This document shows, piece after piece, positions 5,598-62,931 of a stretch of DNA of 64,000 nucleotides. The stretch covers positions 15,872,001-15,936,000 of the forward strand of contig NC_086124.1 in the NCBI RefSeq assembly GCF_963921235.1. The letters run 5' to 3'. The stretch comes from Mobula hypostoma. Taxonomy: Eukaryota. Each line of letters begins with the position of its first letter. The first letter of the stretch is position 1. Under the pieces are notes generated by a model. The model had not been told where the DNA came from. It saw only the letters and a program-made list of their open reading frames with translations, and did not search any database. Position numbers and translations under genes: made by a program.

Positions 5598-5689
5598 GTG
5601 CGTGAAATTATTAATGTGGAATATGATCCTAATATATCTCTTTCTGTCCCTTCATGATTTTCCCTTTTGCCTGTGGTTGATTTCAGCCT

Positions 5690-12329: not shown

Positions 12330-13729
12330 TGTCATACGTGGGGCTGCTGGGAGAGGACCCAAATGCAAGACACAGACACTGAAGTACTAGGAAGAGGACT
12401 TGACTAGAGAGTTGGGACAAGAACACAGACATGGTCTAGGACATTGGCTAGGCAAGCAGGACCAGGACAAGGAACTGGGAACTAGGAGCCTGGGCTTGGA
12501 CTCCGAGCCGGAGACTGGACAAGAACCTAGAACCTGGGTCTTGACCTGGACCCGGATCCCAGAACTAGGTGAAGACATGACGTGACTACAGGACTGGACA
12601 TGGCCTGGGTACTTCAAGGCGAAGACATGACGAGGCTTGGGTTCTTCGAGGCAAGGGCATGACTAGCCTTGGATTCGGACTCCGAGCCAGAGCCTGGACA
12701 AGGACCCAGAACCTGGATCTAGACTTGGGCTCAGACTCTGGAATTAGGCGAAGAAATGACGTGGTCTTGGGGGACAGGACTAGGCAAGGGTATAGGACAG
12801 AACGAGAGGCTCCTGGGCAAGACGAGGGAACTCCAGCGCAAGACGAGGGAACTCCAGCACAGGATGAGGGAACTCCAGCACAGGATGAGGGAACTCCAGC
12901 ACAGGACGAGGCACATAGACAGGACAAAAACACGAAGTCTTGACTTGGTACTCAGGAACAACCGAGCCTTGGACTGGGGACAGCAGGAACCTCGGAACCT
13001 TGGACTTGGGACAACAGGAACGCAGAGCACAGAGCCTCGGTCTTGGGGAGGACAGGAACACAGGGACATGGAACGCAGAGCCGGGACCCCTCCTTGGGAA
13101 CAGGACTTAGGGCCGGGACTCATATACGGAACACAGAGCCAGGACCCTCCTTGCGAACAGGACTTGGGGCTGGGGCTCGACACAGAATGCTGAACATGAC
13201 GAGACAGTTCCCAACACTAGGTAGCGACAAATGGCTGGACCTACCTAGTGAAGGCGTGGACACAGAGACAGTTCCAACTCAACGATAGACAGTTCCTTAC
13301 CTTGACACAGCAAGGCTCCGGTCTCGCTCTGGTGGTGGAACTTAACAAGGCTGAGGGCGAGGCTCCAGATACAGGTTGTGTGCAAGGCTCCAGAAGGAAG
13401 GGGAAGGGAAGGGAACAGTCCAGCCTCAGGGTAACAGCAAAGGCGGCCTGGCTTACCCAATGGAGGCAAGGACAGGGAGGGACAGATCGAACTACAGGGT
13501 AACAGCCAAGACAGCCTGACTTACCCCACAGCGGCGAGGACGGGATACTGACGAGATGAACCAGCAACCACACACGAACCCAGGGTCACTTATACTACCA
13601 GCTCAAGATGAGCATCAGGTGCCTATGATGAAATGCAGCTGAAGCAAGGTACAGCCGGAAGACCTGGAGTCCGGAGCCAAGGACCAGAGTGTGAACCGGA
13701 ACGCGGACTATATGGACTAGACCATGACA
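12330..13729 (-). mobile_element. Solo LTR, family A (1400 bp), 5-bp TSD ACTGG
   Basis: TGTCAT...ATGACA termini; ACTGG at 12325-12329 and 13730-13734; homologous to 35752-36855 and 62932-64000; strand inferred from TATA-like motif. Confidence 0.85.
12821..12910. repeat. 21-bp tandem repeat (~4 copies) inside LTR
   Basis: GA(C/T)GAGGGAACTCCAGCACAG repeated. Confidence 0.9.
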
Positions 13730-25082: not shown

Positions 25083-25946
25083 CTCAGTCCTCTTTTATTG
25101 TCATTTAGAAATGCATACATGTATGCCACAGCAAACAGCTGAGGCCAGTTCATTGGCTACATTTAAGAGGGAGTTAGATAAGGCCCTCGTGGCTAAAGGG
25201 ATCAGGGGGCATGGAGAGAAGACAGGTATAGGGTTCTGAGTTGGATGATCTGCCATGATCATACTGAATGGCAGTGCAGGCTCGAAGGGCCGAATGGCCT
25301 ACTTCTGCACCTATTTTCTATGTTTCTATGATACGATGTTTCTCCGGAGTGATATCACAGAAAACAGGACAAACCAAAGACTAACACTGAGAGAACCACA
25401 TAATTATAACATATAGTTACAGCAGTGCAAAACAATACCATAATTTGATGAAGAACAAACCATGGGCACGGTAAACAAAGTCTCAAAAGTCCCAGAGTCG
25501 ATCGACTCCCGAGTCCCCGCTAGCGGCGGCAAAAGGAAGAAACTCCGTCATAAACCTCCAGACACCGTCAACTTGCCGATGCCTTGGAAGCAGCCGACCA
25601 CAGCCGACACTGAGTCCGTCTGTCGGAAAACTTCGAGCTTCTGACCAGCCTCTCCAATACAGCTTCCCGAGCGCCATCGTCTGCTGGGTGCCTTTGACCT
25701 CGCCCCAGCCGCTGAAACACACAAAGCTGAGGATTTCGGGGCCTTCTGCTCCGGAGATTCCGGTTACCATACAGTAGCAGCAGCAGCAAAGCGGGCATTT
25801 CAGAAGTTTTCCAGATGTTCCTCCATACTCTCAAGTCTGTCTCCATCAAATCAGGATTGTGCACGGTCCCCTACTTGACAGATTTCAGACATCACCACCG
25901 AAGTGGCCACGTGCGCTGCCATCACGCCGCCATTTTCTCCTCCTCC
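25083..25946 (-). mobile_element. Non-autonomous retroelement with YY1-motif 5' end, interrupted by a CR1 3' fragment (~25125-25330, +)
   Basis: - strand starts GAGGAGGAGAAAATGGCGGCG, CpG-rich non-coding body, ends ...gacaataaaagaggactgagtg; 3' end copy at 38545-38626. Confidence 0.55.
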
Positions 25947-28319: not shown

Positions 28320-29305
28320 ACAAAACAAGAGAAAATCTGCAGATACTGGAAATCCAAGGAACACACACAAAATGTTGGAGGAACTTAGCAGGCCAGGCAG
28401 CACCTATGAAAAAAGAGTACAGTCAATGAAGTGTCGGAGGACCGCCGAGATCACGGCGGGGAGCAGTGAGGAAGGGTTTCACTGACCTTCCTTGTCCATT
28501 CATTCCAGCCCACTGATATCCCTCCTGGCACTTATCCTTGCAAGCAAAAAAAGTGCTACACCTCCACCCTCACTGCTACTCAGGGCCCTAAACAGTACTT
28601 ACACGTGAGGGGACACTTCACCTGTGAGTCTGTGGGGGTCATAGACTGTGTCCAGCGCTCCCAGTGTGACCTCCTGTATATCGATGAGACCCGACATAGA
28701 TTGAGCAACAGTTACGCCAAGCACCTATGCTGCATCCGCCAGAAGAGGCAGGATCTCCCGGTGGCTACCCATTTTAATTCCGCTTCCCATTCAGATATAT
28801 CAATCCATGGCCTCCTCAACTGTTGTGATAAGGCCACACTCAGGTTGAAGGAACAACGCCTTATATTCCATCTGGGTAGCCTCCAACCTGATGGCATGAA
28901 CATCGATTTCTTGAACTTCCAGTAATGCCACCTCCCCTTCACCATCCCCCATCCCCTTTTCCCTCTGTCACTTTATCTCCTTACCTGCCCGTCACCTCTC
29001 TGGTGCTCCTCCCGCCTTTTCTTTCTTCCATGGCCTTCTGTCCTCTTCTATCAGATCCCCCCTCTCCAGCCCAGCATCTCTTTCACCAATCAACTTCCCC
29101 GTTCTTTACTTTATCCTTCCCCGTTCAGTTTTCACCGATCAGCTTGTGTTTCTCTTTCCATGCCTCCCACCTTTTAAATCGACTCCTCATCTTTTCTTTC
29201 TCCAGTCCTGCCAAAGGGCCTCAGCCTGAAACGTTGACTGTTTACTTTTTTTCATAGATACTGCCTGGCCTGCTGAGTTCCTCCAGCACTTTGTGTGTGT
29301 TGCTT
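28320..29305 (+). mobile_element. Older-subfamily PLE with inverted 5' terminal arm
   Basis: GIY-YIG ORF 28605-28925; inverted tail 28322-28428; degenerate hammerhead 29203-29240; CAATATCAG(G/A)GGC on both sides. Confidence 0.85.
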
Positions 29306-29379
29306 CAATATCAGAGGCTGAATGGCCTGTACTCCTCTATGTCTGTTCTGTATTCCAAGAGCTCAAGAAGGGAATGTGA

Positions 29380-31578: not shown

Positions 31579-33863
31579 AAACACGAGGAATTCTGATGAT
31601 GCTGGAAATTCAAGCAACACACATCAAAGTTGCTGGTGAACGCAGTAGGCCAGGCAGCATCTCCAGGAAAAGGTACAGTCGACGTTTTGGGCTGAGACCC
31701 TTCGTCAGGACTAACTGAAAGACGAGCTAGTAAAAGATTTGAAAGTGGGAGGGGGAGGGGGAGATCCAAAATGATAGGAGAAGACGGGAGGGGGAGGGAT
31801 GGAGCCAAGAGCTGGACAGTTCATTGGCAAAAGGGATATGACAGGATCATACGACAGGAGGCCCAGGGAGAAAGACAAGGGGGGGGGGACCCAGAGGATG
31901 GGCAAGGGATATAGTGAGAGGGACAGAGGGAGAAAAAGGAGAGAGAGAAAGAATGTGTGTATATACATAAATAATGGATGGGGTACGAGGGGGAGGTGGG
32001 GCATTAGCGGAAGTTTGAGAAGTCAATGTTCATGCCATCAGGTTGGAGGCTACCCAGACGGAATATAAGGTGTTGTTTCTCCAACCTGAGTGTAGCTTCA
32101 TCTTTACAGTAGAGGAGGCCGTGGATAGACATATCAGAATAGGAATGGGACGTGGAATTAAAATGTGTGGCCACTGGGAGATCTTGCTTTCTCTGGCGAA
32201 CCGAGCATAGGTGTTCAGTGAAGCGATCTCCCAGTCTGCGTCGTGTCTCGCCAATATATTGAAGGCCACATTGGGAGCACCGGACACAGTATGTCACCCC
32301 AGCCGACTCACAGGTGAAGTGTCGCCTCACCTGGAAGGACTGTTTGGGGCCCTGAATGGTGGTGAGGGAGGAAGTGTAAGGGCATGTGTAGCACTTGTCC
32401 TGCTTACAAAGATAAGTGCCAGGAGGGAGATCGGTGGGGAGGGATGGGGGGGGCGTGAATGGACAAGTGAGACACGTAGGGAGCGATCCCTGCAGAAAGC
32501 AGAGATGGGGCGGGGAGGGAAAGATGTGTTTAGTGGTGGGATCCCGTTGGAGGTGGTGGAAGTTACGGAGAATAATATGTTGGACCCGGAGGCTGGTGGG
32601 GTGATAGGTGAGGACAAGGAGAACCTTATTCCTAGTCAGATGGCGGGAGGATGGAGTGAAAGCAGATGTGTGTGAAATGGTGGAGATGCGTTTGAGAGCA
32701 GAGTTTATGGTGGAGAAAGGGAAGCTCCTTTCTTTAAAAAAGGAGGACATCTCCCTCGTCCTGGAAGGAAAAGCCTCATCCTGAAAGCAGATGCGGCGGA
32801 GATGGAGGAATTGCGAGAAGGGGATGACATTTTTGTAAGAGACAGGGTGAGAAGAGGAATAGTCCAGATAGCTGTGAGAGTCAGTAGGCTTATAGTAGAC
32901 ATCAGTAGATAAGCTGACTACAGAGACAGAGACAGAAAGATCTAGAAACTGGAGGGAGGTGTCGGAAATGGACCAGGTAAACTTGAGGGCAGGGTGAAAG
33001 TTGGGGGTAAAGTTAATGAAGTCAACAAGCTCAGCATGCGTGCAGGAAGCAGCGCCAATGCAGTCATCGATGTAGCAAAGGAAAAGTGGGGGACAGATAC
33101 CAGAATAGGCACGGAACATAGATTGTTCCACAAAGCCAACAAAAAGGCAGGCATAGCTAGGACCCATACGGGTGCCCATAGCTACACCTTTAGCTTGGAG
33201 GAAGTGGGAGGAGCCAAAGGAGAAATTATTAAGAGTAAGGACTAATTCCGCTAGACGGAGCAGAGTGGTGGTAGAGGGGAACTGGTTAGGTCTGCAATTC
33301 AAAAAGAAGCGGAGAGCTTTGAGACCTTCCTGATGGGGAATGGAAGTATACAGTATAGGGACTAGACATCCATGGTAAAAATAAAGCGGTGGGGGCCGGG
33401 GAACTTAAAATCATCGAAAAGTTTAAGAGCATGAGAAGTGTCACGAACATAGGTAGGAAGGGATTGAACAAGGGGAGATAAAACGGTGTCGAGGTATGCA
33501 GAAATGAGTTCCGTGGGGCAGGAGCAAGCTGAGACAATAGGTCTGCCAGGACAGGCAGGTTTGCGGATCTTGGGTAGGAGGTAGAAACGGGAAGTGCGGG
33601 GTGTGGGAACTATAAGGTTGGTAGCAGTGGATGGGAGATCCCTTGAGCGGATAAAGTCGGTGATGGTGTGGGAGACAATGGCCTGGTACTCCTTAGTGGG
33701 GTCATGATCGAGGGGTAAATAAGAGGAGGTATCCGCGAGTTGTTGCTGTGCGTCGGCAAGGTAGAGGTCAGTAGGCCAGACTACAAAAGCACCCCCCTTA
33801 TCAGCGGGTTTTATACTAAGGTTAGGATTAGTGCGGAGGGAGTGGAGAGCAGAGCGATCGGAA
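31579..33863 (-). mobile_element. Penelope-like element (Neptune-like), RT + GIY-YIG, 5'-truncated and frameshifted
   Basis: ORFs 33362-33976 and 32004-33302: IKPADKGG, FYLLPKI.K..PGRPIVS, FTMDV, GVAMGT, YIDD, Cys linker C..DKCYTC, GIY-YIG. Confidence 0.95.
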
Positions 33864-34563
33864 CTCCCAATGTGGCCTTCTATGTATTGGCGAGACCCAA
33901 CGCAGACTGGGAGATCGTTTTGCTGAACACCTACGCTCTGCCTGCCAGAGAAAGCAGGATCACCCAGTGGCCACACATTTTAATTCCACATCCCATTCCC
34001 ATTCTGACATGTCTATCCATGGCCTCCTCTACTGTAAAGATGAAGCCACACTCAGGTTGGAGGAACAACACCTTACATTCCGACTGGGTAGCCTCCAACC
34101 TGATGGCATGAACATTGACTTCTCTAACTTCCGCTAATGCCCCACCCCCCCCTCGTACCCCATCCGTTATTTATTTATATACACACATTCTTTCTCTCAC
34201 TCTCCTTTTTCTCCCTCTGTCCCTCTGACTATACCCCTTGCCCATCCTCTGGGTTCCCCCCACCTTTCTTTCTCCCTGGGCCTCCTGTCCCATGATCGTC
34301 TTATATCCCTTTTGCCACCCACCTGTCCAGCTCTTGGCTCCATCCCTCCCCCTCCTGTCTCCTCCTTTCATTTTGGATCTCCCCCTCCCCCTCCCACTTT
34401 CAAATCTCTTACTAGCTCTTCCTTCAGTTTGTCCTGACGAAGGGTCTCGGCCCGAAACGTCGACTGTACCTCTTCCTAGAGATGCTGCCTGGCCTGCTGC
34501 GTTCACCAGCAACTTTGATGTGTGTGGCTTGAATTTCCAGCATCTGCAGAATTCCTCATGTTT
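33864..34563 (+). mobile_element. Inverted PLE 3' segment (GIY-YIG end plus terminal repeat)
   Basis: Near-identical reverse complement of 31579-32278. Confidence 0.92.
34425..34466 (+). ncRNA. Minimal type I hammerhead ribozyme, intact core
   Basis: GTC-CTGACGA-A-GGG(TCTCGG)CCC-GAAA-C-GTC-GAC; predicted cleavage after C34461. Confidence 0.8.
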
Positions 34564-34764
34564 GCGTTCGGAAGGAGTAAGGGAGTAGTGGGTCTAAAAG
34601 CAAAACGTCACCAGGTCCCAACGAGCTGCACTCGATAATTTTACAGGAAATGCTTGGAGAGAAGGTGGAGATATAAGTTGATTTTTTTTCAAAACTCACT
34701 GTGTTCTAGGAAGGCCCCGGTGTCTCAAATGCGTCTCCATTGTTCGAGACAAATTCATCCCCAC

Positions 34765-34995
34765 TCCGGACCGTTGCCACGGAAACGACGTCAGTGAAGG
34801 ATCACCATCTATGACGTCAGCGCGCTCCCGGTAAGGAAAAGTCCGCCTTATCACGTGACTGTGAGGCAGTAGCCCGTGAGGTAGGAAAGAGGGAGCTGTC
34901 AATCAGAGTAGCCGCTGGGAACCTTATGAAAATCGTAAATAGCTCACTGAACTCTTCATGAAAACAAAGGGCGTCGCTGAAAAACATTTGTCAAA
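34765..34995 (-). promoter_or_regulatory. Promoter-like module, copy 1 (X-box, CRE x2, E-box, PBX/PKNOX decamer)
   Basis: GTTGCCACGGAAAC 34773-34786, CGACGTCA 34786-34793, TGACGTCA 34812-34819, TCACGTGA 34851-34858, CTGTCAATCA 34896-34905; strand inferred. Confidence 0.65.
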
Positions 34996-35540
34996 GTAAA
35001 TTTACTATCAAACTATGTATATGTCACCATATACGACCTTGAGATCCTTTCTTTGCAGGCAAGTGCAGGAAAATAAATGCAATAGAATTATGAAATCTAG
35101 AAATGACACGGATTGACAAACAACCAACGTGCAAATAATAAAAAAAAATACTGAGAGCATGAGTTGTTGAGAACTTGAAAGTGAGTCCGCATATTGTGGA
35201 ATCATTTCATTGAAGTTTTCTGTGTTTCAAAAGCATGATTGGAAGGAGGCTCCTGTATCTCCTTCCTGATGGCAGCAGCGAAAGGAGAACACGGCATAGA
35301 TCACGGACGTCCTTGATGATGGATGCTGCTTTCTTATGGCAGAACTCCTTGTAACTGTTTTCAATGATGGGGAGAGCTTTGCCTGGGATGAACTTGGCTG
35401 TATCCATCACTTTTTAGAGACCTCCATTCCAGGACATTGGTGTTTCCAGACCAGGCTATCATCCAACCAGACCAGGCTGTCATCCAGCCACTGTGAATCT
35501 GTATAAGTAGTCAAAGGTTTAGATGACATGCTGATTATCC
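34995..35540 (-). mobile_element. Rex1/Babar-like 3' fragment
   Basis: KKAASIIKD..LSLLPSGRRYRSL motif and gtaaatttactatcaaa tail. Confidence 0.7.
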
Positions 35541-35751
35541 TCCAAGATAGCTTGCTGATGCTACTTGGGAGAGTTTTGTACAGAAGTGGGAACCAAAGCA
35601 CCAGGTCAGCAAGGGAAGGATCAGAACAGAAGGTCGATGTTAGGGAAAGAATTGAAAGGCAAAATCAAAATAACAGGTATGATGGGTCAGATAGGTTGAA
35701 GACTGTGTATTTTAACAGTAGAAGTATTGTAGTTAAGGGTGATGCACTTAG

Positions 35752-36855
35752 TGTCACGTTCCGGTCCGTGAACTCTGCGTTCCAGTTCACGGTCTGGTCC
35801 ATTGATCCTCATTCCAGGTTTTCCGGTTTTCCCTTGTTCTGTTGGGGTGCCTCTATTGAGGCACATGATTCTTATTTTGGGCTGATACATAAATAGTTGC
35901 TGGGTTCAGCTTGAGTAGCTGGACTGTTTCCCTCCTTCTGTAGCTCTTGGCTAAAGTCTCACCTGCTACCTTTCACCTGAAGCCTTGCCTGCGTCCTTGC
36001 CTATTCTTGCTGTGAAGTTCTACTGCTGGAGCAAGACAGGAGCCTTGTTGTGTTTAGATAAGGAACTGTCTTTCATTGTTTGGAACTGTCTCTTTGTGTC
36101 CCTGCCTTCGCTAAGTAGGTCTGGCCATTTGCTGCTACCTCGAGTTTGAACTGTCTCCGTGTCCACTCCTTCACTAGGTAGGTCTGGCTGTTTGCTGCTA
36201 CATAGTGTTGGGAACCGTCTCTGTGTCCACACCTTCGCTAGGTAGGTCTGGCTGTTTGCTGCTACCTTGTGCTGGGAACTGTCTTGTCGTGTTCAGCATT
36301 CTGTGTATAAGTCTTGGCCCTACGTCCTGTTCCCAAGGAGGAGTCCCAGCTCTGTGTTCCGTGTATGAGTCCCGGCTGTATGTCCTGTTCCCAAGGAGGG
36401 GTCCTGGCTCTGTGTTCCGCGTTCCTGTCTCCCAAGACCAAGGCTCTCTGTTCCGCGTTCCTGTCTCCGAAGACCAAGACTGAGCTTCGTTTCCTCATCC
36501 TGCCCAGAAGTCCTGCGTCCTGCCACCACGTCCAGTCCTGTTGCCTTGCCACGTCTTGTCCTCGCCTAGATCCGGAGTCCGAGCTCGAGTCAACACCCAG
36601 GTTCTGGGTCCCTGGCCAGTCTCTGGCTCGGAGTCCTTGTCCAGGTTCCAAGTTCCGAGTTCCTCGTCCAGGTGCTGCTTTCCTAGTCTAGTCCTAGCCC
36701 AGGCCCTGTATCCTAGCCTTGTTCAGGGCCTGTGTCTTTTCCAGCATCGTTTCTTCCCCACTTCCCTTGCTTTCTTGACACACCTAGTCCTGTTCCTTGT
36801 ACTTCAGTGTCTGTGTCTTCCATTTGGGTCTGCCATCAACGCCCACCTTATAACA
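35752..36855 (+). mobile_element. Solo LTR, family A (1104 bp), 5-bp TSD CTTAG, inserted in a CR1 fragment
   Basis: TGTCAC...ATAACA termini; CTTAG at 35747-35751 and 36856-36860; CR1 sequence continues across it. Confidence 0.85.
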
Positions 36856-37239
36856 CTTAGGGCATGAAACTACAATGTTGTAGCCATTACTGAAACTTGG
36901 TTGAGAGAGAGGCAGGTTTTTGAAGTTTTAGAAAAGATCGATATGCCTACCTTTTTATTTCCAACATGGATCAGTTAATGTTGCACCTTGGATCATTTTC
37001 AATCTTGTCAAAATCATAAATTAGTTAGATTTGTAGCACAGTTTATTTGATCTTATTTCCTTAAACAAGAGATTGGGTGGCTGCAGTGTCAGGCCTCTCC
37101 TGTGTTCAGTGATTTGTTACTTATATGAAATTCATGTTGTGATAATCCCACTGTTTAAATTATAATATTACAATTCATGTATTTATCTTGCAACTTGTAA
37201 TTAATCGAGTGCTTTGTTCTTGCAATATGTACCACTGAG

Positions 37240-37920
37240 GGATCCTCAGTGGCCAGTATCCTGACTGGTTGGACGATGGCCTAGTCTGGAAACACCAATG
37301 CCCAAGACTAGAGAAGATGACAAAAAGTGGTGGATACAGCCCAGTTCATGTCAGGCAAAGCTCTCCTCATCATTGAGCACTGTTACAAGGAGTTCTACCT
37401 CTTCAAGAACATCTGTCATCAATGCCATATTGTCTTCTCACTGCTGCCATTGGGAAGGAGATACAGGAGCTTTAGGTCCCACACCACCAGGTTCAGCAAG
37501 AGTTGTTACCCTACACCATTCATGCTCTTGAAACTGCAGAGATAACTTCACTGAACTGATTCCAGAATCGACAGACTCGCTTTCAAGTTCTCTACAACTT
37601 ATGTTCTCAGTATTATTTGTTTATATAATTTGCACGATTTGTCTTTTTTTGCATATTGGTTGTCAATTTGATTTATTTGTTTATTTATTATTATCTTATT
37701 TTATTTATTATCATTATTTTTTTCTCTCTCTGCTAGATTATGTATGGCATTGAACTGCTGCTGCTAAGTTAACAAATTTCACGTCACATGCCGTGATAAT
37801 AAACCTGATTCTGATTCTGTGCCATTTATAGATTTCATAAATTCTATTGCATTTATTTTCCTGTAAGTGCCCACAAGAAAATTAATCTCAAGGTAGCATA
37901 TGGTTTGATAATAAATTTGC
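37240..37920 (+). mobile_element. Rex1/Babar-like 3' fragment
   Basis: VDTAQFMSGKAL..FSLLPLGRRYRSF..TTRFSKSCYP and tttgataataaattt tail. Confidence 0.7.
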
Positions 37921-37924
37921 ATAG

Positions 37925-38154
37925 ACTATGACAAATGTTCTTTAGTGACGCTCTTTGTTTTCATGAAGGGTTCGGTGATTTATTTATAATGTTCACAAAG
38001 TTCCTAGCGGTTCCTCTGATTGACAGCTCCAGCTTTCCCTCTGGCCGGGCTGTAACCCCACCGTCACGTGACACCCTGTGATTGCCGACCCTTGGCGCGT
38101 TGACGTCACAGAGTGGGCTCTTCACTGACGTCGTTTCCCCGGCAACGGACCGGC
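37925..38154 (+). promoter_or_regulatory. Promoter-like module, copy 2 (inverted relative to copy 1)
   Basis: TGATTGACAG 38017-38026, GTCACGTGAC 38063-38072, TGACGTCA 38101-38108, TGACGTCG 38126-38133, GTTTCCCCGGCAAC 38133-38146. Confidence 0.65.
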
Positions 38155-38399
38155 AGATCCGGGCGGCAAGTACAAAACCAGTGGGCAGGCGGATGGGGAT
38201 TTAAGCTTTCAATAGCTAAAACTCAAATTATGTTTCACAAGAAGAATTAATAGAAATCCTTGAATCAGTCTTAAAACAGGTCATTCTAGCACTTGAATGG
38301 AAATTATATAGCAGGTACTTGAAGAAGTGTCGGCGGTAATATTTCCAGGCATGTGGATGGATAATAATCGGATATAGAAGCATCATATCAGCAAAATAA

Positions 38400-40030
38400 T
38401 TGGTAAATATTTAATATTCTCAGGTGTCTATGTGGATATTCTGGGGGTACTACACGAAAATATTTATTGGCAATTTATCTTTGTTTAATTAGATTTCTTG
38501 TTTACGACTGTGTGGCTTCTGGTCAGCTTTTAGGTTATGAGGACATTCACTCCTCGTTTATTGTCATTTAGAAATGCATGCTTTAAGAAATGATGCAACG
38601 TTCCTCCAGTATGATATCACAGAAACGTCATCGTCAACTTTAAGAAGGTTTGGATGTGATACAAGCAAAGGGTTTGAGATTGTGTTGTGGTGCAGTAAGG
38701 TAGCCCCCTGTTCCGGCTTTACAGGTTGAAATGGAACAATTGCCCTTACAATTTCAGAGGTTGAAGTTGATATTAACACACTGGATTAATTTGTCTGGGC
38801 AGTGGAATGATCACCCTGTTAAGATGTAGTGGAAACTGTTAGGAACATCAGAAGAAGTGCTTTTAGTTTTGGGTAGTTGGGTTCTTATCACGCCAGGAAT
38901 ATGGGTTTGTTGGATTACACAGTATGTCCTGTAGCTTTCTTGGTAACCCCACCTTGCTTTTTTCCAGTGACTTTAGTTGATTTTAGATTACATGTTTTAA
39001 TAAATTCCAAGGATTCTGTTATGCCCGAGAGTCTGTTGGTTCATCAATATATTAAGAAAAATTATTATGATATGTTAACAATTTTTACCAAAGGATCAGA
39101 AGATAATTTAACTGGGAATGTTTGTGTGGCTGTTATTGTACCTGAATTCCAGGTAGCGTTAACAAAAAACAACTTATTAACCATTTATCGGTATATACCG
39201 TTGAACTGGTTGCCATCATCTGCGGCTTACAGTGGGTGGAGGAAATTTGTCCGTGTAAAGTTGTAATTCGTTCAGCTTCCTTTTCAGTTTTGATGAGTCT
39301 TAAAACAGGTCATTCTAGCAGTAGGTCAGATTTACTGTTGGAAGCTCATCAAACATTGTTTCGCCTACAAAGTATTGGTATATATGTTGGCTTCATATGG
39401 ATCCCAACATATAGAGGTGTTGAGGAGAATGAGTGGGTTGATAGTTTAGCTGAGAAATCTGTTAAACTTTCAGCAGTGGATATAAAACTCCCACTTATCA
39501 AATCAGAAGGGGTTGGTAGGATTAAGAATTAGGGAGTTATGTCAAGACTTGTGGGATATTGGGCATAAGTGGAGACACCTTTACAGAATACATAATACTA
39601 TGGGGGAAGAGGGTAAAACACGAAGGGAAGGGATTATTTTGACTTAGAATTGGGCATTCTATGCTTAATTATTCCTCATATCTTGTTGGAAAACATCACT
39701 CTGGGGTGTGTAGGTTCTGTCATCATTATGAAACAGTTGAACATTCTATTCCAGTGTGAAGCATATAAGGTTGAAAGAAATCAAATGCAGACTTCATTAC
39801 AATCTTTGGAGTTCATAGTTTTCATGTAAATGTTGTTAAGTTATGGGAGTGACTTTAATTCTCGATATCATCTTTCGTTACTTAGAATCTATCTTTTGGT
39901 GGTAATTTAGCTTTCATTTGAAAGAGAAGTTGTAGGAGTTTTGTTTCCATAACTTTCTACACCGCAGTCCAGTCCAGTTGGTGACAGTAATGCACCTTAA
40001 AGTTGGACTGCCAACCAACATAAAAGGTCA
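38400..40030 (+). mobile_element. Nimb/I-clade LINE 3' part with RNase H
   Basis: IFTKGSED (DGS-like) and FIWIPTYRGVEENEWVDSLA motifs; 3' end as at 6770-6842. Confidence 0.75.
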
Positions 40031-45609: not shown

Positions 45610-45783
45610 GTAACACATGCAAAATGCTGGAGGAACTCAGCAGGCCAGGCAGCATCTATGGAAAAGAGAACAGTCAACGTTTCGGGCTGAGACCCTTCAG
45701 CTGGACTTGCCTGCTGCGTTCCTCCAGCATTTTGTGTGTGTTGCTTGAATTTCTAGCATCTGCAGATTTTCTCTTGTTTGTGC
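45610..45783. mobile_element. Fold-back mini-PLE with degenerate hammerhead, 11-bp TSD
   Basis: Inverted tail arms around a hammerhead remnant (45671-45707); TTTGGAATATG at 45599-45609 and 45784-45794. Confidence 0.8.
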
Positions 45784-47212
45784 TTTGGAATATGCCGTTA
45801 AGTTCGGGTTACCCTGCTGGAAGACAGGGACCATTAAGCTGGAAAGAGCGCAGACGGGATTTGCGGATATTGCTGGATCTTGAACGACATTTACAGAGAG
45901 AGTTTCAGCAGCTTTGGACAATTTTCATGGGAGTATCAGAGAATGTGTGGTGATATTATAGAGGTGCATAATATTATGAGGGGCCTAGATAGGGTCAGAA
46001 AACATGGTCTTTTTGCCAGGGTTGGGGAATCAAGAATTGGCGGGCATTGGTTTAACATGAGAAGGGAGAGATTTAACTGGAACCTGAAGGGCAATTTTTC
46101 TACACAGAGGGTGGACAATGTGTGGAATAATCTGCGAGTGGAACTGGTTGAGGCATGTATACTAATGATGCTAAAAAGGTATTTCGACAGGTAGATGAAA
46201 TGAAAAGGATTTGAGCAATATGAGCCTGGGGGTGGGTCAGGCTCACATGGGAACCTTGGTCGGCTCGATCATTTGAACCATTAACTCGGGTTGATGACAT
46301 TAAACTATTCTAAATGACTTGCTATTTCTTCATCGATCACATATTCCAGTACATTGCCAGTAACAGATGAGAAGTTAACAGGACTTCAGTTACCTACTCT
46401 TTGTCTTCCACTCTCAAGTGGAGTCACATTTCAGGTTTTCCAACCCACTGGGACCTTCCTGAAGCACAATGAATTTTGACAATCTTCAAATAATGTCTCC
46501 ACTTTCTCTCCAAACCCTAGGTTGCAGGTCATTTGGACATTGCGATGTTTGTTTTAGATTTTCCCTTGAAATAGTGATTATTGCCTAGTGTTGACACGTC
46601 ACTTCCGAGATATCTATGGCAAGTTTGCTGTGTCCGTACCATGAACACTGATCAAATTATTGAGTTAACTTATCTGCTTTTCTTGGTTAATTTATTTTTT
46701 TTGTCTCTTCTCACTGCTTCTTGAAATATTCTCTATACTGTGGCCTACTACCAGCCCTTACCTCTTTATGTACTCTTTGATTCTATATTTACCTTGATGA
46801 TTTTCATTGACCACAGATGGTTCACCTTTCTGTCTAATTGGATCCCTCTGGCTAATTGGAGTCAATGTCTTCTGAGCATTATCAACCAGCTCTTTAAACG
46901 ACTGCACTGCTCATCTACTGATCTGTCCCTGAGTCTACTTACCTTATTCACCCCAGGCAACTCCACCGTCATACCCGTGTAGCTGCCCTTATTTAGGTGG
47001 AGGATATCGGTTTGGACGCAGGTATTTGTTCTTAAATTGTGTCTGGAATTCTCCGAAGTTGTGATCATTTTTTCCTCGGGGATCCTTCACCACAATCTTT
47101 CTTATTATTCTGACTTCATTACACAGAACTACATATGAAATAGCCTGTTCCTGGGTGGGTTCTGTAACATACTGCTGTAAAGAACCTTCCCTAACCACTG
47201 CATGAATTCCTC

Positions 47213-48557
47213 CCTCCCCTTTCTAGATCTTTCTGTCTCTGTCTCTGGAGACAGCTTATCCACTGATGTCTACTATAAGCCTACTGACTCTCACAGCTAT
47301 CTGGACTATTCCTCTTCTCACCCTGTCTCTTGCAAAAACGTCATCCCCTTCTCGCAATTCCTCCATCTCCGCCGCATCTGCTCTCAGGATGAGGCTTTTC
47401 ATTCTAGGACGAGGGAGATGTCTTCATTTTTTAAAGAAAGGGGCTTCCCTTCCTCCACTATCAACTCTGCTCTTAAACGCATCTCCCCCATTTCACGTAC
47501 ATCTGCTCTCACTCCATCCTCCCACCACCCCACTAGGAATAGGGTTCCCCTGGTCCTCACCTACCACCCCACCAGCCTCCGGGTCCAACATATTATTCTC
47601 CATAACTTCCGCCACCTCCAACGGGATCCCACCACTAAGCACATCTTTCCCTCCCCCCCTCTATCTGCATTCCGCAGGGATCGCTCCCTACACAACTCCC
47701 TTGTCCATTCGTCCCCCCCATCCCTCCCCACTGATCTCCCTCCTGGCACTTATCCGTGTAAGCGGAGCAAGTGCTACACATGCCCTTACACTTCCTCCCT
47801 TACCACCATTCAGGGCCCCAAACAGTCCTTCCAGGTGAGGCATCACTTCACCTGTGAGTCGACTGGGGTGATATACTGCGTCCGGTGCTCCCGATGTGGC
47901 CTTTTATATATTGGTGAGACCCGACGCAGACTGGGAGACCGCTTTGCTGAACATCTACGCTCTGTCCGCCAGAGAAAACAGGATCTCCCAGTGGCCACAC
48001 ATTTTAATTCCACATCCCATTCCCATTCTGACATGTCTATCCACGGCCTCCTCTACTGTAAAGATGAAGCCACACTCAGGTTGGAGGAACAACACCTTAT
48101 ATTCCGTCTGGGTAGCCTCCAACCTGATGGCATGAACATTGACTTCTCTAACTTCCGCTAAGGCCCCACCTCCCCCTCGTACCCCATCTGTTACTCATTT
48201 TTATGCACACATTCTTTCTCTCACTCTCCTTTTTCTCCCTCTGTCCCTCTGAATATACCTCTTGCCCATCCTCTGGGTCACCCCCCCCCCTTGTCTTTCT
48301 TCCCGGACCTCCTGTCCCATGATCCTCTCGTATCCCCTTTTGCCTATCACCTGTCCAGCTCTCGGCTCTATCCCTCCCCCTCCTGTCTTCTCCTATCATT
48401 TTGCATCTCCCCCTCCCCCTCCAGCTTTCAAATCCCTTACTCACTCTTCCTTCAGTTAGTCCTGACGAAGGGTCTCGGCCTGAAACATCGACTGCGCCTC
48501 TTCCTATAGATGCTGCTTGGCCTGCTGCGTTCACCAGCAACTTTGATGTATGTTGCT
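47213..48557 (+). mobile_element. Young PLE, 5'-truncated, inserted in a CR1 with 10-bp TSD
   Basis: Uninterrupted 319-aa frame (RT thumb, CKRSKCYTC, GVIYCVRCSRCGLLYIGET); TGAATTCCTC at 47203-47212 and 48558-48567. Confidence 0.93.
48453..48494 (+). ncRNA. Minimal type I hammerhead motif (ATC cleavage triplet)
   Basis: AGTC-CTGACGA-A-GGG(TCTCGG)CCT-GAAA-C-ATC-GACT. Confidence 0.7.
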
Positions 48558-48903
48558 TGAATTCCTCTTCCTTGTACCTTGCCAATTTAATTAGATTCAT
48601 CAATATACAAATCAAAATCAAGTTGCAACATCACTGTTGACATATTGTCTTCACTGTCATCCTTACTTGAGTCACTGGTGGCCACGGTACGAGTCCCTGT
48701 TATGTCTATCCTGCAGTTCTTTGGATTTCACATGGTGTCGCTGTCTCAGAGAATTGTCCGATGTAGGCTGTAATTCCACAGAATTCAGATAGTGTCACTG
48801 TTTCCAGAGACGGTTTGATGTAATTCTATGGAGTTCCCACAGTGGCAGTATACAGGGGGACTATTAGTTTCCCAGGGCGGAGCTTGAGAAGTACGTCGAA
48901 TAT

Positions 48904-49023
48904 GAGAAAATCTGCAGACGTGGGTCCTGGTGAAGGGTCTCGGCCCGAAACATTGACTGTTTACTCTTTCCCATAGATGCAGTCTGGCCTACTGAGTTCC
49001 TCCAGCATTTTGTGGGTGTTGCT
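48904..49023 (+). mobile_element. Mini-PLE terminal fragment with hammerhead remnant
   Basis: Short inverted arm gagaaaatctgcagacg joined to gtcctggtgaagggtctcggcccgaaacattgactg and tail. Confidence 0.7.
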
Positions 49024-49173
49024 TTAAAAAGTAGATGCTGCCCTGGGTGGAGCACCAGCAGTGGCGTTCTGGCAGCGTCACAAGCAGGATTGCCCACTTG
49101 AAGTCACGCCTGCACTTTTAAACCTTATTTCCATTTGTTTCTGAGCGCCAAGCAATACACATTGATTGAATTT

Positions 49174-49358
49174 AAAACACAAGATTCTGCAGATACTGAA
49201 AATCCAGAGCAACACACAAAAACACAACTTCACGAAGGGTCTCGGCCTGAAACGTCGACTGCACCTCTTCCTACAGATGCTGCCTGGCCTGCTGCGTTCA
49301 CCAGCAACTTTGATGTGTGTTGCTTGAATTTCCAGCATCTGCAGAATTCCTGTTGTTT
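49174..49358 (+). mobile_element. Fold-back mini-PLE with partial hammerhead
   Basis: Inverted arm 49174-49220 plus acgaagggtctcggcctgaaacgtcgactg and complete tail. Confidence 0.75.
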
Positions 49359-49429
49359 GACTTCAACTAAATTACCACCTTTGTCTTTCGCTCATTTGGT
49401 TAATGCAAAGATTTGCACTTTAGGCATGT

Positions 49430-54974: not shown

Positions 54975-55907
54975 TTAAACTTTTCCCCCCGTGTGAACCC
55001 GATAGTGTGTCACAAGGTTGGATGACCGAGTGAATTCCTTCCCACATTCAGAGCAGGTGAATGGTCTCTTCCCAGTATGAACTCGGTAGTGTGTCACAAG
55101 GTTGGATGAGTGAGTGAATCCTTTCCCACATTCAGAGCAGGTGAATGGTCTCTCCCCCGTGTGAACCCGGTAGTGTGCCACAAGGGTGGATGACTGAGTG
55201 AATCCCTTCCCACAGTCAGAGCAGATGAATGGCCTCTCTCCAGTGTGAACTCGGTGGTGTATCTGCAGACTAGATTGCTGAGTGAATGCCTTACCACAGT
55301 CTGAGCAGGTGAATGGCTTCTCCCCAGTGTGAACTCGCTGATGTATCTTCAGTTGAGATGACCGAATAAATTCCTTCCCACAGTCTGAGCAAATGAACGA
55401 TCTCTCCCCAGTATGAACTGACTGGTGTGCTAACAGGTCAGAGGATCGAGTGAATCCTTTCCCACAGTCTGAGCACGTGAACGGCCTCTCCCCAGTGTGA
55501 ACTCGCTGATGTAGCTTCAGATGAGATGACCGAGTGAACCCTTTTCCACAGTCTGAGCAGATGAATGGTCTCTCCCCAGTGTGAATTGACTGGTGTGCTC
55601 GTAGGTCAGATGACCAAGTGAATGTCTTCCCACAGTCTGAGCAGGTGAATGGCCTCTCTCCAGTGTGAAGTCGCTGGTGTGTCTGCAGGCTGGATGACTG
55701 AGTAAATGCCCTACCACAGTCCGAGCAGGTGAACGGTCTCTCCCCGGTGTGAACTCGGTGATGTAGCTTCAGTTCAGATGGCCGAGTGAACCCCTTCCCA
55801 CAGTCTGAGCAGGTGAATGGCCTCTCCCCAGTGTGAAGTCGCTGATGTATCTTCAATTGATATGAGTCAGGAAATCCCTTCACACAATCTGAACAGGTAA
55901 ACGGCAT
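54975..55907 (-). CDS. C2H2 tandem zinc-finger protein, 11 fingers from the first in-frame ATG (310 aa), no KRAB or other effector domain
   Basis: Repeated F(T/I)CS(D/E)CG..F.....L..H...HTGERP; ATG at 55907; one more intact finger just upstream of the ATG. Confidence 0.85.
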
Positions 55908-56343
55908 CTCCACAGTATGAAAACGCTTGTGTGTCAGAAGACCAGATGATGGTGTGAATCTTTTCCCACACACACAACAGTTGAATGGTCACTCTCCCTT
56001 GGGAACTCACTGGAGCGACAGCAGGTTGCCTGAGTGAGTGAATCTCTTCCCAGACATGGGATAGGTGAACAGTCTCTCACAGGTGTGAATTTTCTGATGT
56101 ATTTCCAGCTTGGCTGACAAAATTAATTAATTCCCGCAGACAGAACAGGTGAATCCTTTCATATATGGTGTGAACGGGCTAATATTTCTTCAGGCTGGAT
56201 AACTGAGTACATTCCTCACCCACACAGCAGGTGACTTGCCTCTCTCCATATTAAACTCACTGGGGTGTCTGCGAACCGGCGGCTGCGTGAGTGAACTCCT
56301 TGTGTTTGAGATTCCCAGATACAAATTCTTTGCTGTTTCAATC

Positions 56344-56937
56344 CTGTAAAAAAAAAATTACAAAAGACATTGATGGGTGAAGAACATTCCAGATGAGATA
56401 AGTATAGTCTCTATGGTGAGCTCTGATAGCACATTGTTACAACGAGGTAGTTTTTTCCAAGAACTAAAGCAGATGAAGGAATTTTGTTTTTTATCCACGC
56501 AGCACTGACATTTTCCTAGACTGGAGGGTAGAGAGAGTCAGAATTATAATTTTCTCAGACTTGGATTTAGATAGCTGGAGCCTGGCAGTGTCTGAGAGAT
56601 CCGTTTGATCCCATTTACTCTACCTGCGCTTCCAAATACATCCTACAAAAAGTTGGGAAAGCGTTGGTAGTGGTATCCATGGCTGTCTCTGTACCCAGAA
56701 ACCCCCACGAAGAGAGAGACCCCTCTATCCTGCCACTGTTGCAGCGATGCGCATGTGCTGCAGACATGACGGCAAACCTTCGCTCATCAGCAGAAACCTG
56801 GGACTAAGAAAATTGGAATAAACCGAAACTGTCTCGGGGTGCAGAGCTACGGTGAGTCCGGCCTCACAGAAATTGCTTCTCAATTGCGGTGCTCACGCCG
56901 ATACCAATGAAACCCCCAACCGGAACGCCGTTCTTAC
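56344..56937 (-). other. Predicted intron 1 of the ZNF gene
   Basis: Donor CAG|GTAAGA at 56938/56937; poly-T tract with ACAG|G acceptor at 56344/56343. Confidence 0.6.
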
Positions 56938-57070
56938 CTGCGACCGATTCTGCAGACCCTTTTCTCCACTGAGCGCATGCGCGAATTCGGAGCTGTCTGT
57001 GACCCTTACGCCTGCGCGTTTTATCGTTGGGTCTCGCCGGCGAATTGTGCATCACGAAGGTTACTGGGTA
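56730..57070. promoter_or_regulatory. CpG-rich promoter region with NRF1-type motifs
   Basis: TGCGCATGTGC near 56748, GCGCATGCGC 56973-56982, CGCCTGCGCG near 57009. Confidence 0.65.
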
Positions 57071-57789
57071 AGCAAGGTTCAAAGCGTATTTATTATTAAA
57101 GCCTGGAGAAATTATACAACTTTGGGATTTATCTGTCTACAGATAGCCACAAAGCGAGAAACCCGAAGGAACTTAATTAAAACTCAGAAAGACCAACATT
57201 CATTGCGCTTAGCGCCGAACAGTTTACTGAACCAGATTGAGTTATTAGATCCGAATCCCTGGAATAGGCCCGAGCCTTGGTCTCAGCTCATCATATTAGC
57301 GGTGGAAACCGCCGGTAAGCTTGCAGAGAGGAAACGCAACAGCCTGGGGTAGACTCATAGCCTCAGCGTCGCGGAATGAACATTGCGAGAGAGCGTGGGA
57401 AATCGGCCCAACCCTCCCCTCCGGTCCCGATACCCTGCCTTTGTAGGCTATCTGGGCCGGTTTTTTTTTTATTGTCCAAACAACTGATTGTGCCTCACCG
57501 CAGCAAAACGCTCTGGGCCAAGACCACGGCACCAGCCCGAAGCAACGGGCTACCAGTACGGCTCATCCCTCGAAATCGCTCACCTCATCATTGTTTGCCT
57601 TGACAATTTACCACGATTTACTGCATAATATGTTGTTATATGCTTTACTCAAATTTCGTTCCTTTGGGACTAGCAGTAAGCTGTCACTCACCTTCAGGAA
57701 CATGATCTTAAACCGAAAATTCTGCGAATAGTGTCCATAAGCACAGGGTCCACACCACATGCCGCAAAAATATTCAGTTTTTATGTAGA

Positions 57790-60106: not shown

Positions 60107-60990
60107 TGTTACGCACCCCGTAACTGGGTTGTCAAACCAGTAGAAATGGAACACTCGTTGGTGTCTGTGATTACTAGAAACTAATAAAGTTTTTTTTAGT
60201 TTAGAAAATAAGTAATACAGTATACTAACCGCAAGGATATAAATGTAACAGCTTAGAGATGATAGTATACACATATACACAGAAATAGGGTAATAGGAAT
60301 CAACCAAGCTCTATCGCAGTCTAGGGGTAAATTGTCAGTCTTAAGGTGAAGCAGAGTTCAGTTCAGTTTACTGTGGTTCGAAGTAATCGCTGTTGTTGTA
60401 CCGTTGGGGGGGGTGAGGTGGAGAGAGGGAGAGAGAGAATGAGAGATACGGTTGAGGTTTCAGGCAAACCTTTCGATGCCTTCTGATCCCGTTGTGGTCG
60501 CCGACTGTGACCCCTCCGTTCCGGATGCGATCGTTCTTTCATGGTGAACCCGGCACACAGGCATGGGCGGACACACAACAGGTTCCCACCGGTCGTAACT
60601 TTACACTCTGTGAGCCTCTGACCGATTTCCGCGAATCGGTCCTCCAAGCTCTCACCAACTTGTGGGGCACAATGCTCTTTCCAGGGTCTCGTGGCGTGTG
60701 TGTCTGTGCCTTAGCAAACCTGCTATTTTATCCTCCCCCTGATGGGGTATCACCTGTCCATCAAACTTCACACTTCCTATTGTCTCAGAAGGATTGTTAA
60801 TGAGCAGTTCAGGTTCAACGCAAACTGTCTGTGGCAGACGCCAACATACTGAATTGTGTGTGTGTCTCTCTCTCGTTATCTCTCTCTTCTCTCTTATTAG
60901 TATTTTGAATGGCTCTCCCTTATCTCTCGTTATCTCTCTCTCTCATTAACGGCATCTGTTCTGCAGCTCTGCTTGGCTTCACACATGACA
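60107..60990 (-). mobile_element. Solo LTR, family B (884 bp), 4-bp TSD TAAT, in a (TATAA)n tract
   Basis: TGTTAC...ATGACA termini; TAAT at 60103-60106 and 60991-60994; strand inferred. Confidence 0.75.
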
Positions 60991-62890: not shown

Positions 62891-62931
62891 TAAGCTCCTC
62901 AGACAATTCGACTGTCCTTCTGTGCACCCAC

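What the first reader, a model, noticed from the sequence alone, without database searches (positions are those of the whole stretch)
34765..38154. Inverted duplicated promoter module with five conserved motifs and no visible gene
Seen: 34765-~35540 and ~37240-38154 are diverged inverted copies facing outward. Both keep, in the same order, a PBX/PKNOX decamer (TGATTGACAG), an E-box (TCACGTGA; GTCACGTGAC in copy 2), a full CRE, a second CRE-like site and an RFX X-box, while spacers have drifted. Both abut a Rex1-like tail at about the same point. These CpG-containing motifs survive in a CpG-poor region. Copy 1 is followed by a canonical donor (ACA|GTGAGT, 34700/34699). Inference: a pair of active divergent promoters for non-coding RNAs, or for distant or lost ZNF exons, between the histone cluster and the ZNF gene.
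Basis: partly seen in the sequence, partly recalled or inferred. Interest (0 to 1): 0.72.

Follow-up and report, generated by a model that had tools for sequence, protein, structure and literature searches.

The report
Duplicated orphan CpG-island regulatory module
An old inverted duplication copied a LINE tail plus about 225 bp of single-copy DNA, and in both copies that DNA has stayed a small CpG island with the same five transcription-factor sites, so it is probably a promoter- or enhancer-type element whose target is unknown.

Summary
Arms 34766-~35493 (-) and ~37243-38153 (+) are inverted copies. About 82% of aligned bases match in the LINE part and 75.5% in the motif module.

Most of each arm is the 3' end of a high-copy LINE. 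Only the outer ~225 bp (34766-34990; 37932-38153) is the module. All five named motifs are present in both arms in the same order.

The module is not a high-copy TE. In DNA contigs of three related organisms it has single-copy-like depth (10-31), against 10^4-10^6 for the flanking repeats. Both arms and their breakpoints occur in those organisms.

Both modules are CpG-island-like, with CpG o/e 1.09 and 0.98 against 0.27-0.41 in the LINE arms. Eleven CpGs are shared at aligned sites, against none in the LINE arms. Motif cores are intact (2 mismatches in 48 columns), while the spacers between them diverged faster than the LINE arms.

This points to long-term germline hypomethylation and constraint on the sites, that is, a duplicated orphan CpG-island regulatory element.

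Direction and target are unresolved. A probable RNA library covers only the E-box/CRE segment of both modules and none of the outward flanks, so the proposed outward exon and donor are unsupported. Ordinary kind, moderate interest.

The parts
34766..34990 (-). Module copy 1: about 225 bp of non-TE, CpG-island-like DNA. Read outward on the minus strand it carries the DECA site, E-box, CRE, CRE-like site and X-box.
   Evidence: GC 0.50 and CpG o/e 1.09. Single-copy-like depth of 9.8-23.7 in three related DNA runs. Aligns to copy 2. The LINE homology of other genomic copies ends at 34991 (loose ends).
34991..35493 (-). Arm 1 LINE part: 5'-truncated LINE, with an ORF2 C-terminal-like reading frame and a 3' UTR.
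   Evidence: Depth of 10^4-10^5 in the DNA runs. 82% identical to arm 2 with K2P 0.21. The translation reads like a LINE ORF2 C-terminus. The LINE clade was not resolved.
35494..37242 (.). Spacer between the arms. It holds a LINE 5'-like piece split by a solo-LTR-like insert (35741-36854, TG..CA ends, CTTAG direct repeat) and a unique AT-rich stretch at ~36940-37200.
   Evidence: Sequence read directly. Copies of the insert lie at 62923-63944 and 12356-13347. Depth is 11-15 at 36943-37139.
37243..37931 (+). Arm 2 LINE part. It has an extra 145-bp very-high-copy block (37664-37808) that arm 1 lacks.
   Evidence: Depth reaches 5x10^5.
37932..38153 (+). Module copy 2: about 222 bp of non-TE, CpG-island-like DNA with the same five motifs.
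   Evidence: GC 0.52 and CpG o/e 0.98. Depth of 24-31 in the DNA runs. The probable RNA run X1 has mean depth 50.8 in bin 37928-38124, confined to 38041-38128.
38017..38026 (+). PBX:PREP DECA site TGATTGACAG. Its partner in arm 1 is at 34896-34905(-).
   Evidence: It sits inside a 17-nt block that is identical in both arms. The motif's identity as a Prep:Pbx site is from PMC6023610.
38065..38070 (.). E-box CACGTG. Its partner in arm 1 is at 34852-34857.
   Evidence: It lies in a 9-nt identical block, GTCACGTGA.
38101..38108 (.). Full CRE TGACGTCA. Its partner in arm 1 is at 34812-34819.
38125..38146 (+). CRE-like CTGACGTCG directly abutting the RFX X-box GTTTCCCCGGCAAC. Their partners in arm 1 are at 34773-34794(-).
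   Evidence: The CRE-like site and the left X-box half-site lie in a 19-nt identical block (38120-38138) and the right half-site in an 8-nt block (38141-38148); the only two motif mismatches fall between them, in the X-box centre. In related organism B, 38129 reads T, which breaks this CRE-like site in copy 2.
34574..34765 (-). Unique outward flank of copy 1, carrying the candidate donor ACA|GTGAGT (34700/34699).
   Evidence: Sequence read directly. It has no homology to the flank of copy 2. X1 depth is 0. The PLE insertion begins at 34564.
38154..38220 (+). Unique outward flank of copy 2. It is followed from ~38220 by an RNase-H-bearing LINE fragment.
   Evidence: Weak RNase_H hit for 39236-39532. 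X1 depth is 0 in bin 38125-38321.

Best explanation
A single ancestral locus had a 5'-truncated LINE ending next to a short single-copy regulatory element. A DNA-level inverted duplication copied the LINE tail and about 225 bp of that element. The breakpoints lie inside the LINE and just past the X-box.

Both copies have since behaved as small non-methylated, 'orphan' CpG islands. Factors that bind the CRE/ATF sites, the CACGTG E-box, the RFX X-box and the PBX:PREP decamer are inferred to occupy them in the germline. That occupancy would keep them free of CpG methylation, so their CpGs persist while the sequence between sites turns over quickly. They most likely act as promoter- or enhancer-type elements for an unannotated, probably non-coding, transcript or for a distal gene.

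Shown: the duplication, the single-copy status, the age, the CpG retention and the contrast between motifs and spacers. Inferred: factor binding, hypomethylation and regulatory activity. Direction and target are unknown.
For: Structure of the duplication:
- The LINE-module junction is shared by both arms.

Copy number and age:
- Depth over the modules is 10-31 in three related organisms, against 10^4-10^6 over the adjoining repeats.
- Contigs from organisms B, D and E cross the LINE-module junctions and the outer breakpoints, so the structure predates their split.

CpG content:
- CpG o/e is 1.09 and 0.98 in the modules, 0.41 and 0.27 in the LINE arms, and 0.46 for the window.
- Eleven CpGs are shared at aligned sites in the module and none in the LINE arms (Fisher P=7e-4).
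- Seven of those 11 lie outside the five named motifs, which points to general protection from CpG decay.

Motifs against spacers:
- Motif columns show 2 mismatches in 48, both in the X-box centre (hypergeometric P=5e-5).
- The DECA-to-E-box spacing is exactly 24 nt in both arms.
- The part B spacers show 34 mismatches in 68 columns, against an 18% rate in the LINE arms (P=2e-9).

Other support:
- In the 24-56 kb TE tract the only CpG-island-like 230-bp windows are these two modules and one other segment.
- X1, a probable RNA library of the window's species label, covers part B of both modules and nothing in the three neighbouring unique bins.
- DECA elements are described as conserved, nucleosome-depleted and TSS-proximal (PMC6023610).
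- Orphan CpG islands often act as promoters (PMC2944787).
Against: - There is no direct measurement of methylation, accessibility, binding or transcription start.
- X1 is labelled RNA only as a guess. Its cover is 88 nt at most on copy 2 and could reflect something other than local transcription.
- Across species the modules as a whole are not better conserved than their neighbours. In organism B the contig over module 1 shows 13 differences in 270 nt, against 30 in 1521 nt nearby (P=0.003-0.009).
- In organism B a C>T change at 38129 breaks the second CRE-like site of copy 2.
- No exon, ORF or structured RNA lies next to either module.
- The motifs were picked by a reader who was looking at conserved blocks, so the motif P-values are partly post hoc.
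Confidence: 0.55

Rival explanations
1. The modules are a neutral relic. The duplicated DNA once was, or sat next to, a promoter, but neither copy works now. On this view the CpG richness and fast turnover reflect a local mutational regime, such as GC-biased gene conversion at a recombination-prone island or residual passive hypomethylation. The intact motifs would then be survivorship among short palindromes.
For: - The module evolves faster than its neighbours, both between the arms (K2P 0.30 against 0.21) and between species.
- No nearby gene was found.
- One motif is already broken in organism B.
- The outward flanks are TE-invaded within 70-200 bp.
Against: - A regime that scrambles the spacers to about 50% identity should also hit the motif cores, yet 46 of 48 motif columns are identical.
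- The DECA site has no CpG and is kept inside a 17-nt identical block.
- The 24-nt DECA-to-E-box spacing is preserved exactly.
- X1 cover falls on both modules.
Confidence: 0.2
2. The conserved segment is itself transcribed. On this view part B (E-box to CRE) is a short first exon of an unannotated spliced non-coding RNA, and the start sites lie inside the module. Candidate donors sit at homologous positions in both arms. Inward, they are ACT|GTGAGG at 34860(+) and ACG|GTGGGG at 38062(-). Outward, they are ATG|GTGATC at 34806(-) and AGA|GTGGGC at 38112(+).
For: - X1 cover is confined to 38041-38128 and to 34776-34925. There is no cover at 38040, 38129 or either outward flank.
Against: - X1 is not confirmed to be RNA.
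- No splice joint was reported at these places among the joints that were shown.
- The central unique bin 36943-37139 has no X1 depth.
- No RNA structure or Rfam family matches.
Confidence: 0.12
3. The module is part of a transposable element: a LINE 5' UTR, an LTR, or sequence carried along by LINE 3' transduction. The two copies would then be two insertions.
For: - The module directly abuts a LINE 3' end in both arms.
- The whole neighbourhood is TE sequence.
Against: - Depth is single-copy-like in three genomes at 85% or greater likeness, while every true TE bin reaches 10^3-10^6.
- There is no other copy in the 64 kb window.
- There is no poly-A or microsatellite tail and no target-site duplication at the outer ends.
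- Both arms share the same inner LINE truncation point, and the copies lie 1.7 kb apart in mirror orientation.
Confidence: 0.03

Closest known systems
Orphan CpG islands / non-methylated islands that act as unannotated or alternative promoters (PMC2944787; PMC5927659)
   Same: - Short CpG-rich islands in CpG-depleted DNA, away from any annotated gene start.
- They carry CpG-containing factor sites (CRE, CACGTG).
- CpGs have been retained over long evolutionary time.
   Different: - They are very small, about 225 bp, just over the 200-bp convention.
- They occur as a mirror-image pair created by duplication.
- The unmethylated state and transcription initiation have not been measured here.
DECA-motif (Prep:Pbx) elements of zebrafish and mouse (PMC6023610)
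   Same: - An exact TGATTGACAG decamer sits inside a conserved block.
- The described DECA elements are often conserved, nucleosome-depleted and within 5 kb of a TSS.
   Different: - The described elements pair DECA with nearby NF-Y CCAAT sites. Here the partners are an E-box, two CRE-type sites and an X-box.
- TALE factor binding has not been tested.
MHC class I/II SXY module (RFX X1 box directly followed by a CREB X2 box, then an NF-Y Y box)
   Same: - An X-box is directly followed by a CRE-type half-site.
- A CTGATTG-containing site lies further on.
- The setting next to a histone cluster and ZNF genes recalls the extended MHC of mammals (my own knowledge).
   Different: - The CTGATTG site reads ATTGAC, not ATTGG, so it has no CCAAT core.
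- It lies about 100 bp from the X-box, not 17-20 bp.
- No S box was identified and no MHC gene is nearby.
Inverted segmental duplications (palindromes) that carry a promoter
   Same: - Two mirror arms with a spacer between them.
- Sharp breakpoints.
- A TE-host junction copied intact.
   Different: - The arms are short (0.7-0.9 kb) and old (K2P about 0.2).
- There is no sign of arm-to-arm homogenisation in the module.

Membership tests
CpG island (sequence definition) | Length of at least 200 bp, GC of at least 0.50, CpG o/e of at least 0.6 | tested here: met
   34766-34997 is 232 bp with GC 0.504 and o/e 1.09. 37925-38153 is 229 bp with GC 0.520 and o/e 0.98. Both only just reach the length threshold.
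Non-methylated island / orphan CGI promoter | Unmethylated in germline and tissues | not testable with these tools
   Only indirect evidence is available. Eleven CpGs are shared by both arms in the module, against none in the LINE arms.
Non-methylated island / orphan CGI promoter | Transcription initiation or RNA output at the island | tested here: inconclusive
   X1, labelled RNA by guess only, covers 38041-38128 and part of 34776-34925. It has no depth on the neighbouring unique bins. Contigs do not reveal strand or start sites.
Non-methylated island / orphan CGI promoter | Not at a known gene start | tested here: met
   No host ORF or exon was recognised between 23 and 55 kb. No public annotation could be consulted.
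Divergent (outward-facing) promoter pair | Transcripts leave each module outward, with a first exon and donor | tested here: not met
   X1 depth is 0 at 34579-34775 and 38125-38321. The outward flanks are not homologous. This rests on one library, so the absence is weak.
High-copy transposable element (LINE 5' UTR or LTR) | Many dispersed genomic copies | tested here: not met
   Depth over the modules is 10-31, against 10^3-10^6 over the TE bins, in three organisms. The window holds only two copies.
MHC SXY regulatory module | X1-X2 followed by an NF-Y CCAAT Y box at a fixed spacing of about 17-20 bp | tested here: not met
   The CTGATTGACAG site lacks a CCAAT core and lies about 100 bp from the X-box.
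Small structured RNA gene (tRNA, snRNA, Rfam families) | Match to a covariance model or a stable conserved fold | tested here: not met
   No Rfam match at E of 1 or below in 34300-38400. No tRNA was found. Fold z-scores range from -1.5 to +0.1.
Inverted segmental duplication | Two arms homologous across a TE-host junction, with sharp ends, present in relatives | tested here: met

The most novel reading that the evidence does not exclude
The two islands are inward-facing promoters. Their transcripts would run through the mirror-image LINE arms and form a hairpin or convergent double-stranded RNA. The locus would then be a long-kept small-RNA source (hpRNA- or piRNA-like) aimed at that very abundant LINE family, driven by a duplicated RFX/CRE/E-box/PBX-PREP promoter.
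Probability: 0.05. Interest if true: 0.7.

Novelty: new member of a known kind. Interest (0 to 1): 0.35.

Why it matters
If the modules are active, they are a natural experiment. Two paralogous copies of one small regulatory element have drifted apart for longer than the related ray species have been separate. The comparison shows what has to stay: five site cores, several flanking blocks, an exact 24-nt spacing and the CpGs. It also shows what is free to change: the spacers, which change faster than dead LINE sequence.

That pattern gives a compact and testable motif grammar for a cartilaginous-fish CpG-island element. It also marks an unannotated regulatory or transcribed site between the histone cluster and a ZNF gene. 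Otherwise this is an ordinary orphan CpG island made double by a local rearrangement.

Tried and rejected
- High-copy TE origin: rejected on read depth.
- Assembly artefact: rejected. The arms are about 20% diverged, and their junctions appear in contigs from three other organisms.
- Gene conversion as the cause of motif identity: unlikely. Identity is lowest, not highest, around the E-box and CRE.
- Micro-inversion as the cause of the diverged part B: rejected. The direct alignment scores 20, the reverse complement scores -24, and shuffles average -21.5.
- Resumption of homology beyond the TE insertions on either side: none found.
- Structured RNA, tRNA or Rfam family: none found.
- Host exons in the 23-55 kb tract: only reverse transcriptase, GIY-YIG (Penelope-like) and LINE fragments.
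- LINE clade ('Rex1-like'): could not be confirmed. There was no Pfam hit, only a weak in-window protein match (E=0.12), and the Atlas gave only unnamed clusters.
- Fetching orthologous loci through exact-protein look-up of local ORFs: none of ten ORFs is in the collection.
- 3' transduction by the LINE: considered and thought unlikely. There is no tail or target-site duplication at the outer ends.
Full report
**What is there**

The region holds a true inverted repeat. Arm 1 runs 34766-~35493 on the minus strand and arm 2 runs ~37243-38153 on the plus strand. Homology ends sharply at CCGG on the outer side of each arm (34766-34769; 38150-38153). Beyond that, identity drops to 0.33-0.48, which is what MAFFT gives for unrelated sequence.

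Each arm has two parts.
- The inner 500-690 bp is the 3' end of a LINE. Its translation reads like the C-terminal end of a LINE ORF2 followed by a 3' UTR. In DNA contigs of three related organisms this part has summed depths of 10^4-10^5.
- The outer ~225 bp (34766-34990; 37932-38153) is the 'module'. Hundreds of contigs from other LINE copies stop matching at 34991, which fixes the LINE-module junction (loose ends).

The LINE-module junction is therefore part of the duplicated unit.

The spacer (35494-37242) contains a solo-LTR-like insert at 35741-36854 with TG..CA ends and a CTTAG direct repeat. Copies of it lie elsewhere in the window.

Outward of arm 1 there are 192 bp of unique DNA. Then comes a Penelope-like element (31579-34564) with inverted terminal parts.

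Outward of arm 2 there are about 70 bp of unique DNA. Then comes an RNase-H-bearing LINE fragment.

Five histone 3' stem-loops lie at 3.8-22.2 kb and an 11-finger C2H2 ORF lies at 54975-55973(-). The 23-55 kb stretch between them reads as TE debris only.

**The motifs**

All five motifs are present in both arms in the same order.
- The DECA decamer occurs only in the two modules in 64 kb, against 0.12 expected.
- The X-box pattern occurs only in the two modules, against 0.04 expected.
- The full CRE occurs at both modules and once elsewhere, at 61268.

TGATTGACAG is the described Prep:Pbx 'DECA' site (PMC6023610).

**Not a repeat family**

At 85% or greater likeness, the bins over the modules have depths of 9.8-23.7 (copy 1) and 24.1-30.9 (copy 2) in organisms B, D and E. 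That is the same order as the unique central bin 36943-37139 (11-15). It is three to five orders of magnitude below every TE bin.

Depths summed over contigs are not copy numbers, but the contrast is unambiguous.

Contigs from B, D and E cross the LINE-module junctions and the outer breakpoints (records 9, 15, 19, 23, 25, 30 and 31). The mirror structure is therefore older than the split of these organisms. They differ from the window by about 2% (B) and 6-12% (D, E). The arms differ from each other by K2P 0.21 in their LINE part.

**Evidence for constraint and hypomethylation**

1. CpG content.
   - CpG o/e is 1.09 and 0.98 in the modules, 0.41 and 0.27 in the attached LINE arms, and 0.46 in the window.
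   - Between 24 and 56 kb, only these two modules and one other segment pass a CpG-island-like filter.
2. CpG retention.
   - At aligned positions 11 CpGs are shared by both modules, with 5 and 4 private to one arm.
   - The LINE arms share none, with 8 and 6 private (Fisher P=7e-4).
   - Only four of the 11 shared CpGs lie inside the five named motifs. The protection is therefore general, as expected for DNA that escapes germline methylation, and not only site-specific.
3. Motif cores. The 48 motif columns carry 2 mismatches, both in the non-contacted centre of the X-box. The module as a whole carries 56 mismatches in 229 columns (hypergeometric P=5e-5).
4. Identical blocks.
   - The blocks of 8 nt or more that are identical between arms are listed. 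Five of the seven contain the named motifs.
   - The other two, TGACAAATGTT and CTTTGTTTTCATGAAG, are unassigned.
   - The DECA-to-E-box distance is exactly 24 nt in both arms, even though only half of those 24 positions agree.
5. Spacers.
   - The stretch between the DECA site and the second CRE-type site ('part B', 38036-38119) is only 59.5% identical.
   - Its non-motif columns show 34 mismatches in 68, against an 18% mismatch rate in the LINE arms (P=2e-9).
   - In 60-column windows the arms hold 0.77-0.88 identity everywhere except here, where it falls to 0.55-0.68.
   - Part B is still homologous in direct orientation.
   - The same excess shows up independently between species. The organism-B contig over module 1 has 13 differences in 270 nt, against 30 in 1521 nt for neighbouring contigs (P=0.003-0.009).

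So the module is a fast-changing stretch in which the site cores and the CpGs are held. The motif P-values are partly post hoc, because the motifs were noticed as conserved blocks. The motifs are, however, canonical sites defined independently of this alignment.

**Expression**

No run on record as RNA holds the region.

X1 is labelled 'RNA?' by the tool as a guess. It has 105 Mb of contigs, and its study lists several samples under the window's species label. I take it as probably RNA-seq, but this is inference.

X1 has mean depth 50.8 in bin 37928-38124 and 7.1 in bin 34776-34972. It has 0 in the unique bins 34579-34775, 36943-37139 and 38125-38321.

X1 also has zero depth at 37919, 37943, 37999, 38005, 38040, 38129 and 38191. 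Its cover on copy 2 therefore lies within 38041-38128, which holds the E-box and the CRE. Its cover on copy 1 lies within 34776-34925, the homologous part. Spill-over from the LINE bins is excluded by the zeros at 37919 and 34970-34976.

This is a specific enrichment of both modules. It fits local transcription, or accessibility if the library is not RNA.

It does not support the outward first exon. The proposed 34700-34765 exon and its donor have no cover, and the two outward flanks are unrelated in sequence.

Candidate donors exist at homologous positions in both directions.

**What it is most likely**

The modules are most likely a duplicated orphan CpG-island (non-methylated-island) type element. 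It would be a factor-binding platform of promoter or enhancer kind, kept unmethylated by occupancy of its CpG-containing sites. Its target is unknown. Orphan CpG islands commonly mark unannotated promoters (PMC2944787).

I put 0.55 on a functional regulatory element of this kind. The promoter-versus-enhancer question is left open.

The rivals are:
- a non-functional relic under a peculiar mutational regime (0.2);
- the conserved segment being a short first exon of an unannotated RNA (0.12);
- a TE origin (0.03);
- an inward-transcribed hairpin or small-RNA source (0.05, the most novel reading not excluded).

**Comparison with known systems**

- The X-box directly abutting a CRE-type site recalls the X1-X2 pair of MHC SXY modules. 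However, the would-be Y box has no CCAAT core and lies about 100 bp away, so membership fails.
- DECA elements described in zebrafish pair with NF-Y sites, not with this set of partners.
- No Rfam family, tRNA or stable fold was found.

**Species**

I did not test this. It agrees with my own recollection that these repeats look elasmobranch.

Jawed-vertebrate-type global methylation with unmethylated regulatory elements has been reported for a cartilaginous fish (PMC5437953, abstract only).

**Verdict**

This is a new member of a known kind and of moderate interest.

Noticed in passing
window 31579-34564: Penelope-like element with inverted terminal parts: 31579-32277 matches 34563-33864 at 91.7% identity. 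It has a 432-aa ORF with a weak GIY-YIG hit. Further copies or fragments lie at 47209-48563, 4604-5601, 28323-29312, 45612-45790 and 48924-49359.
   Followed up: partly
window 35741-36854: Solo-LTR-like insert of about 1.1 kb with TG..CA ends, flanked by a CTTAG direct repeat. It sits inside a LINE 5'-like piece. Related copies lie at 62923-63944(+) and 12356-13347(-). Its depth differs strongly among the three related organisms.
   Followed up: partly
window 37664-37808: A 145-bp block present only in arm 2, with the highest repeat depth of the arms (about 5x10^5). Contigs from other LINE copies skip 37618-37833. It is therefore either a nested insertion in arm 2 or a subfamily difference, and is probably not a deletion in arm 1.
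   Followed up: no
window 35455-35497: A short tandem duplication of about 21 nt inside the LINE part of arm 1, absent from arm 2.
   Followed up: no
window 38129: In related organism B both contigs read T instead of C. This turns the CRE-like TGACGTCG of copy 2 into TGATGTCG. Organisms D and E keep C.
   Followed up: no
window 56701-57650 and 61268: A CpG-island-like stretch with an NRF1-type palindrome (56973) lies about 1 kb upstream of the C2H2 ZNF ORF (54975-55973, minus strand). It is probably that gene's own promoter. The only other full CRE of the window is at 61268. Further CpG-island-like segments lie at 25381-25770, 60311-60730 and 62761-63160.
   Followed up: no
window 38240-39540: Fragment of an RNase-H-bearing non-LTR element, with a weak RNase_H Pfam hit at 39236-39532. 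A 28-nt piece of it is repeated at 38264-38291 and 39293-39320.
   Followed up: partly
window 37885-38153 (organism E contigs): Two different organism-E contigs, each about 90% like copy 2, both end within 3 nt of the duplication breakpoint at 38153. They may be two alleles, or a further module-2-like copy in that species.
   Followed up: no
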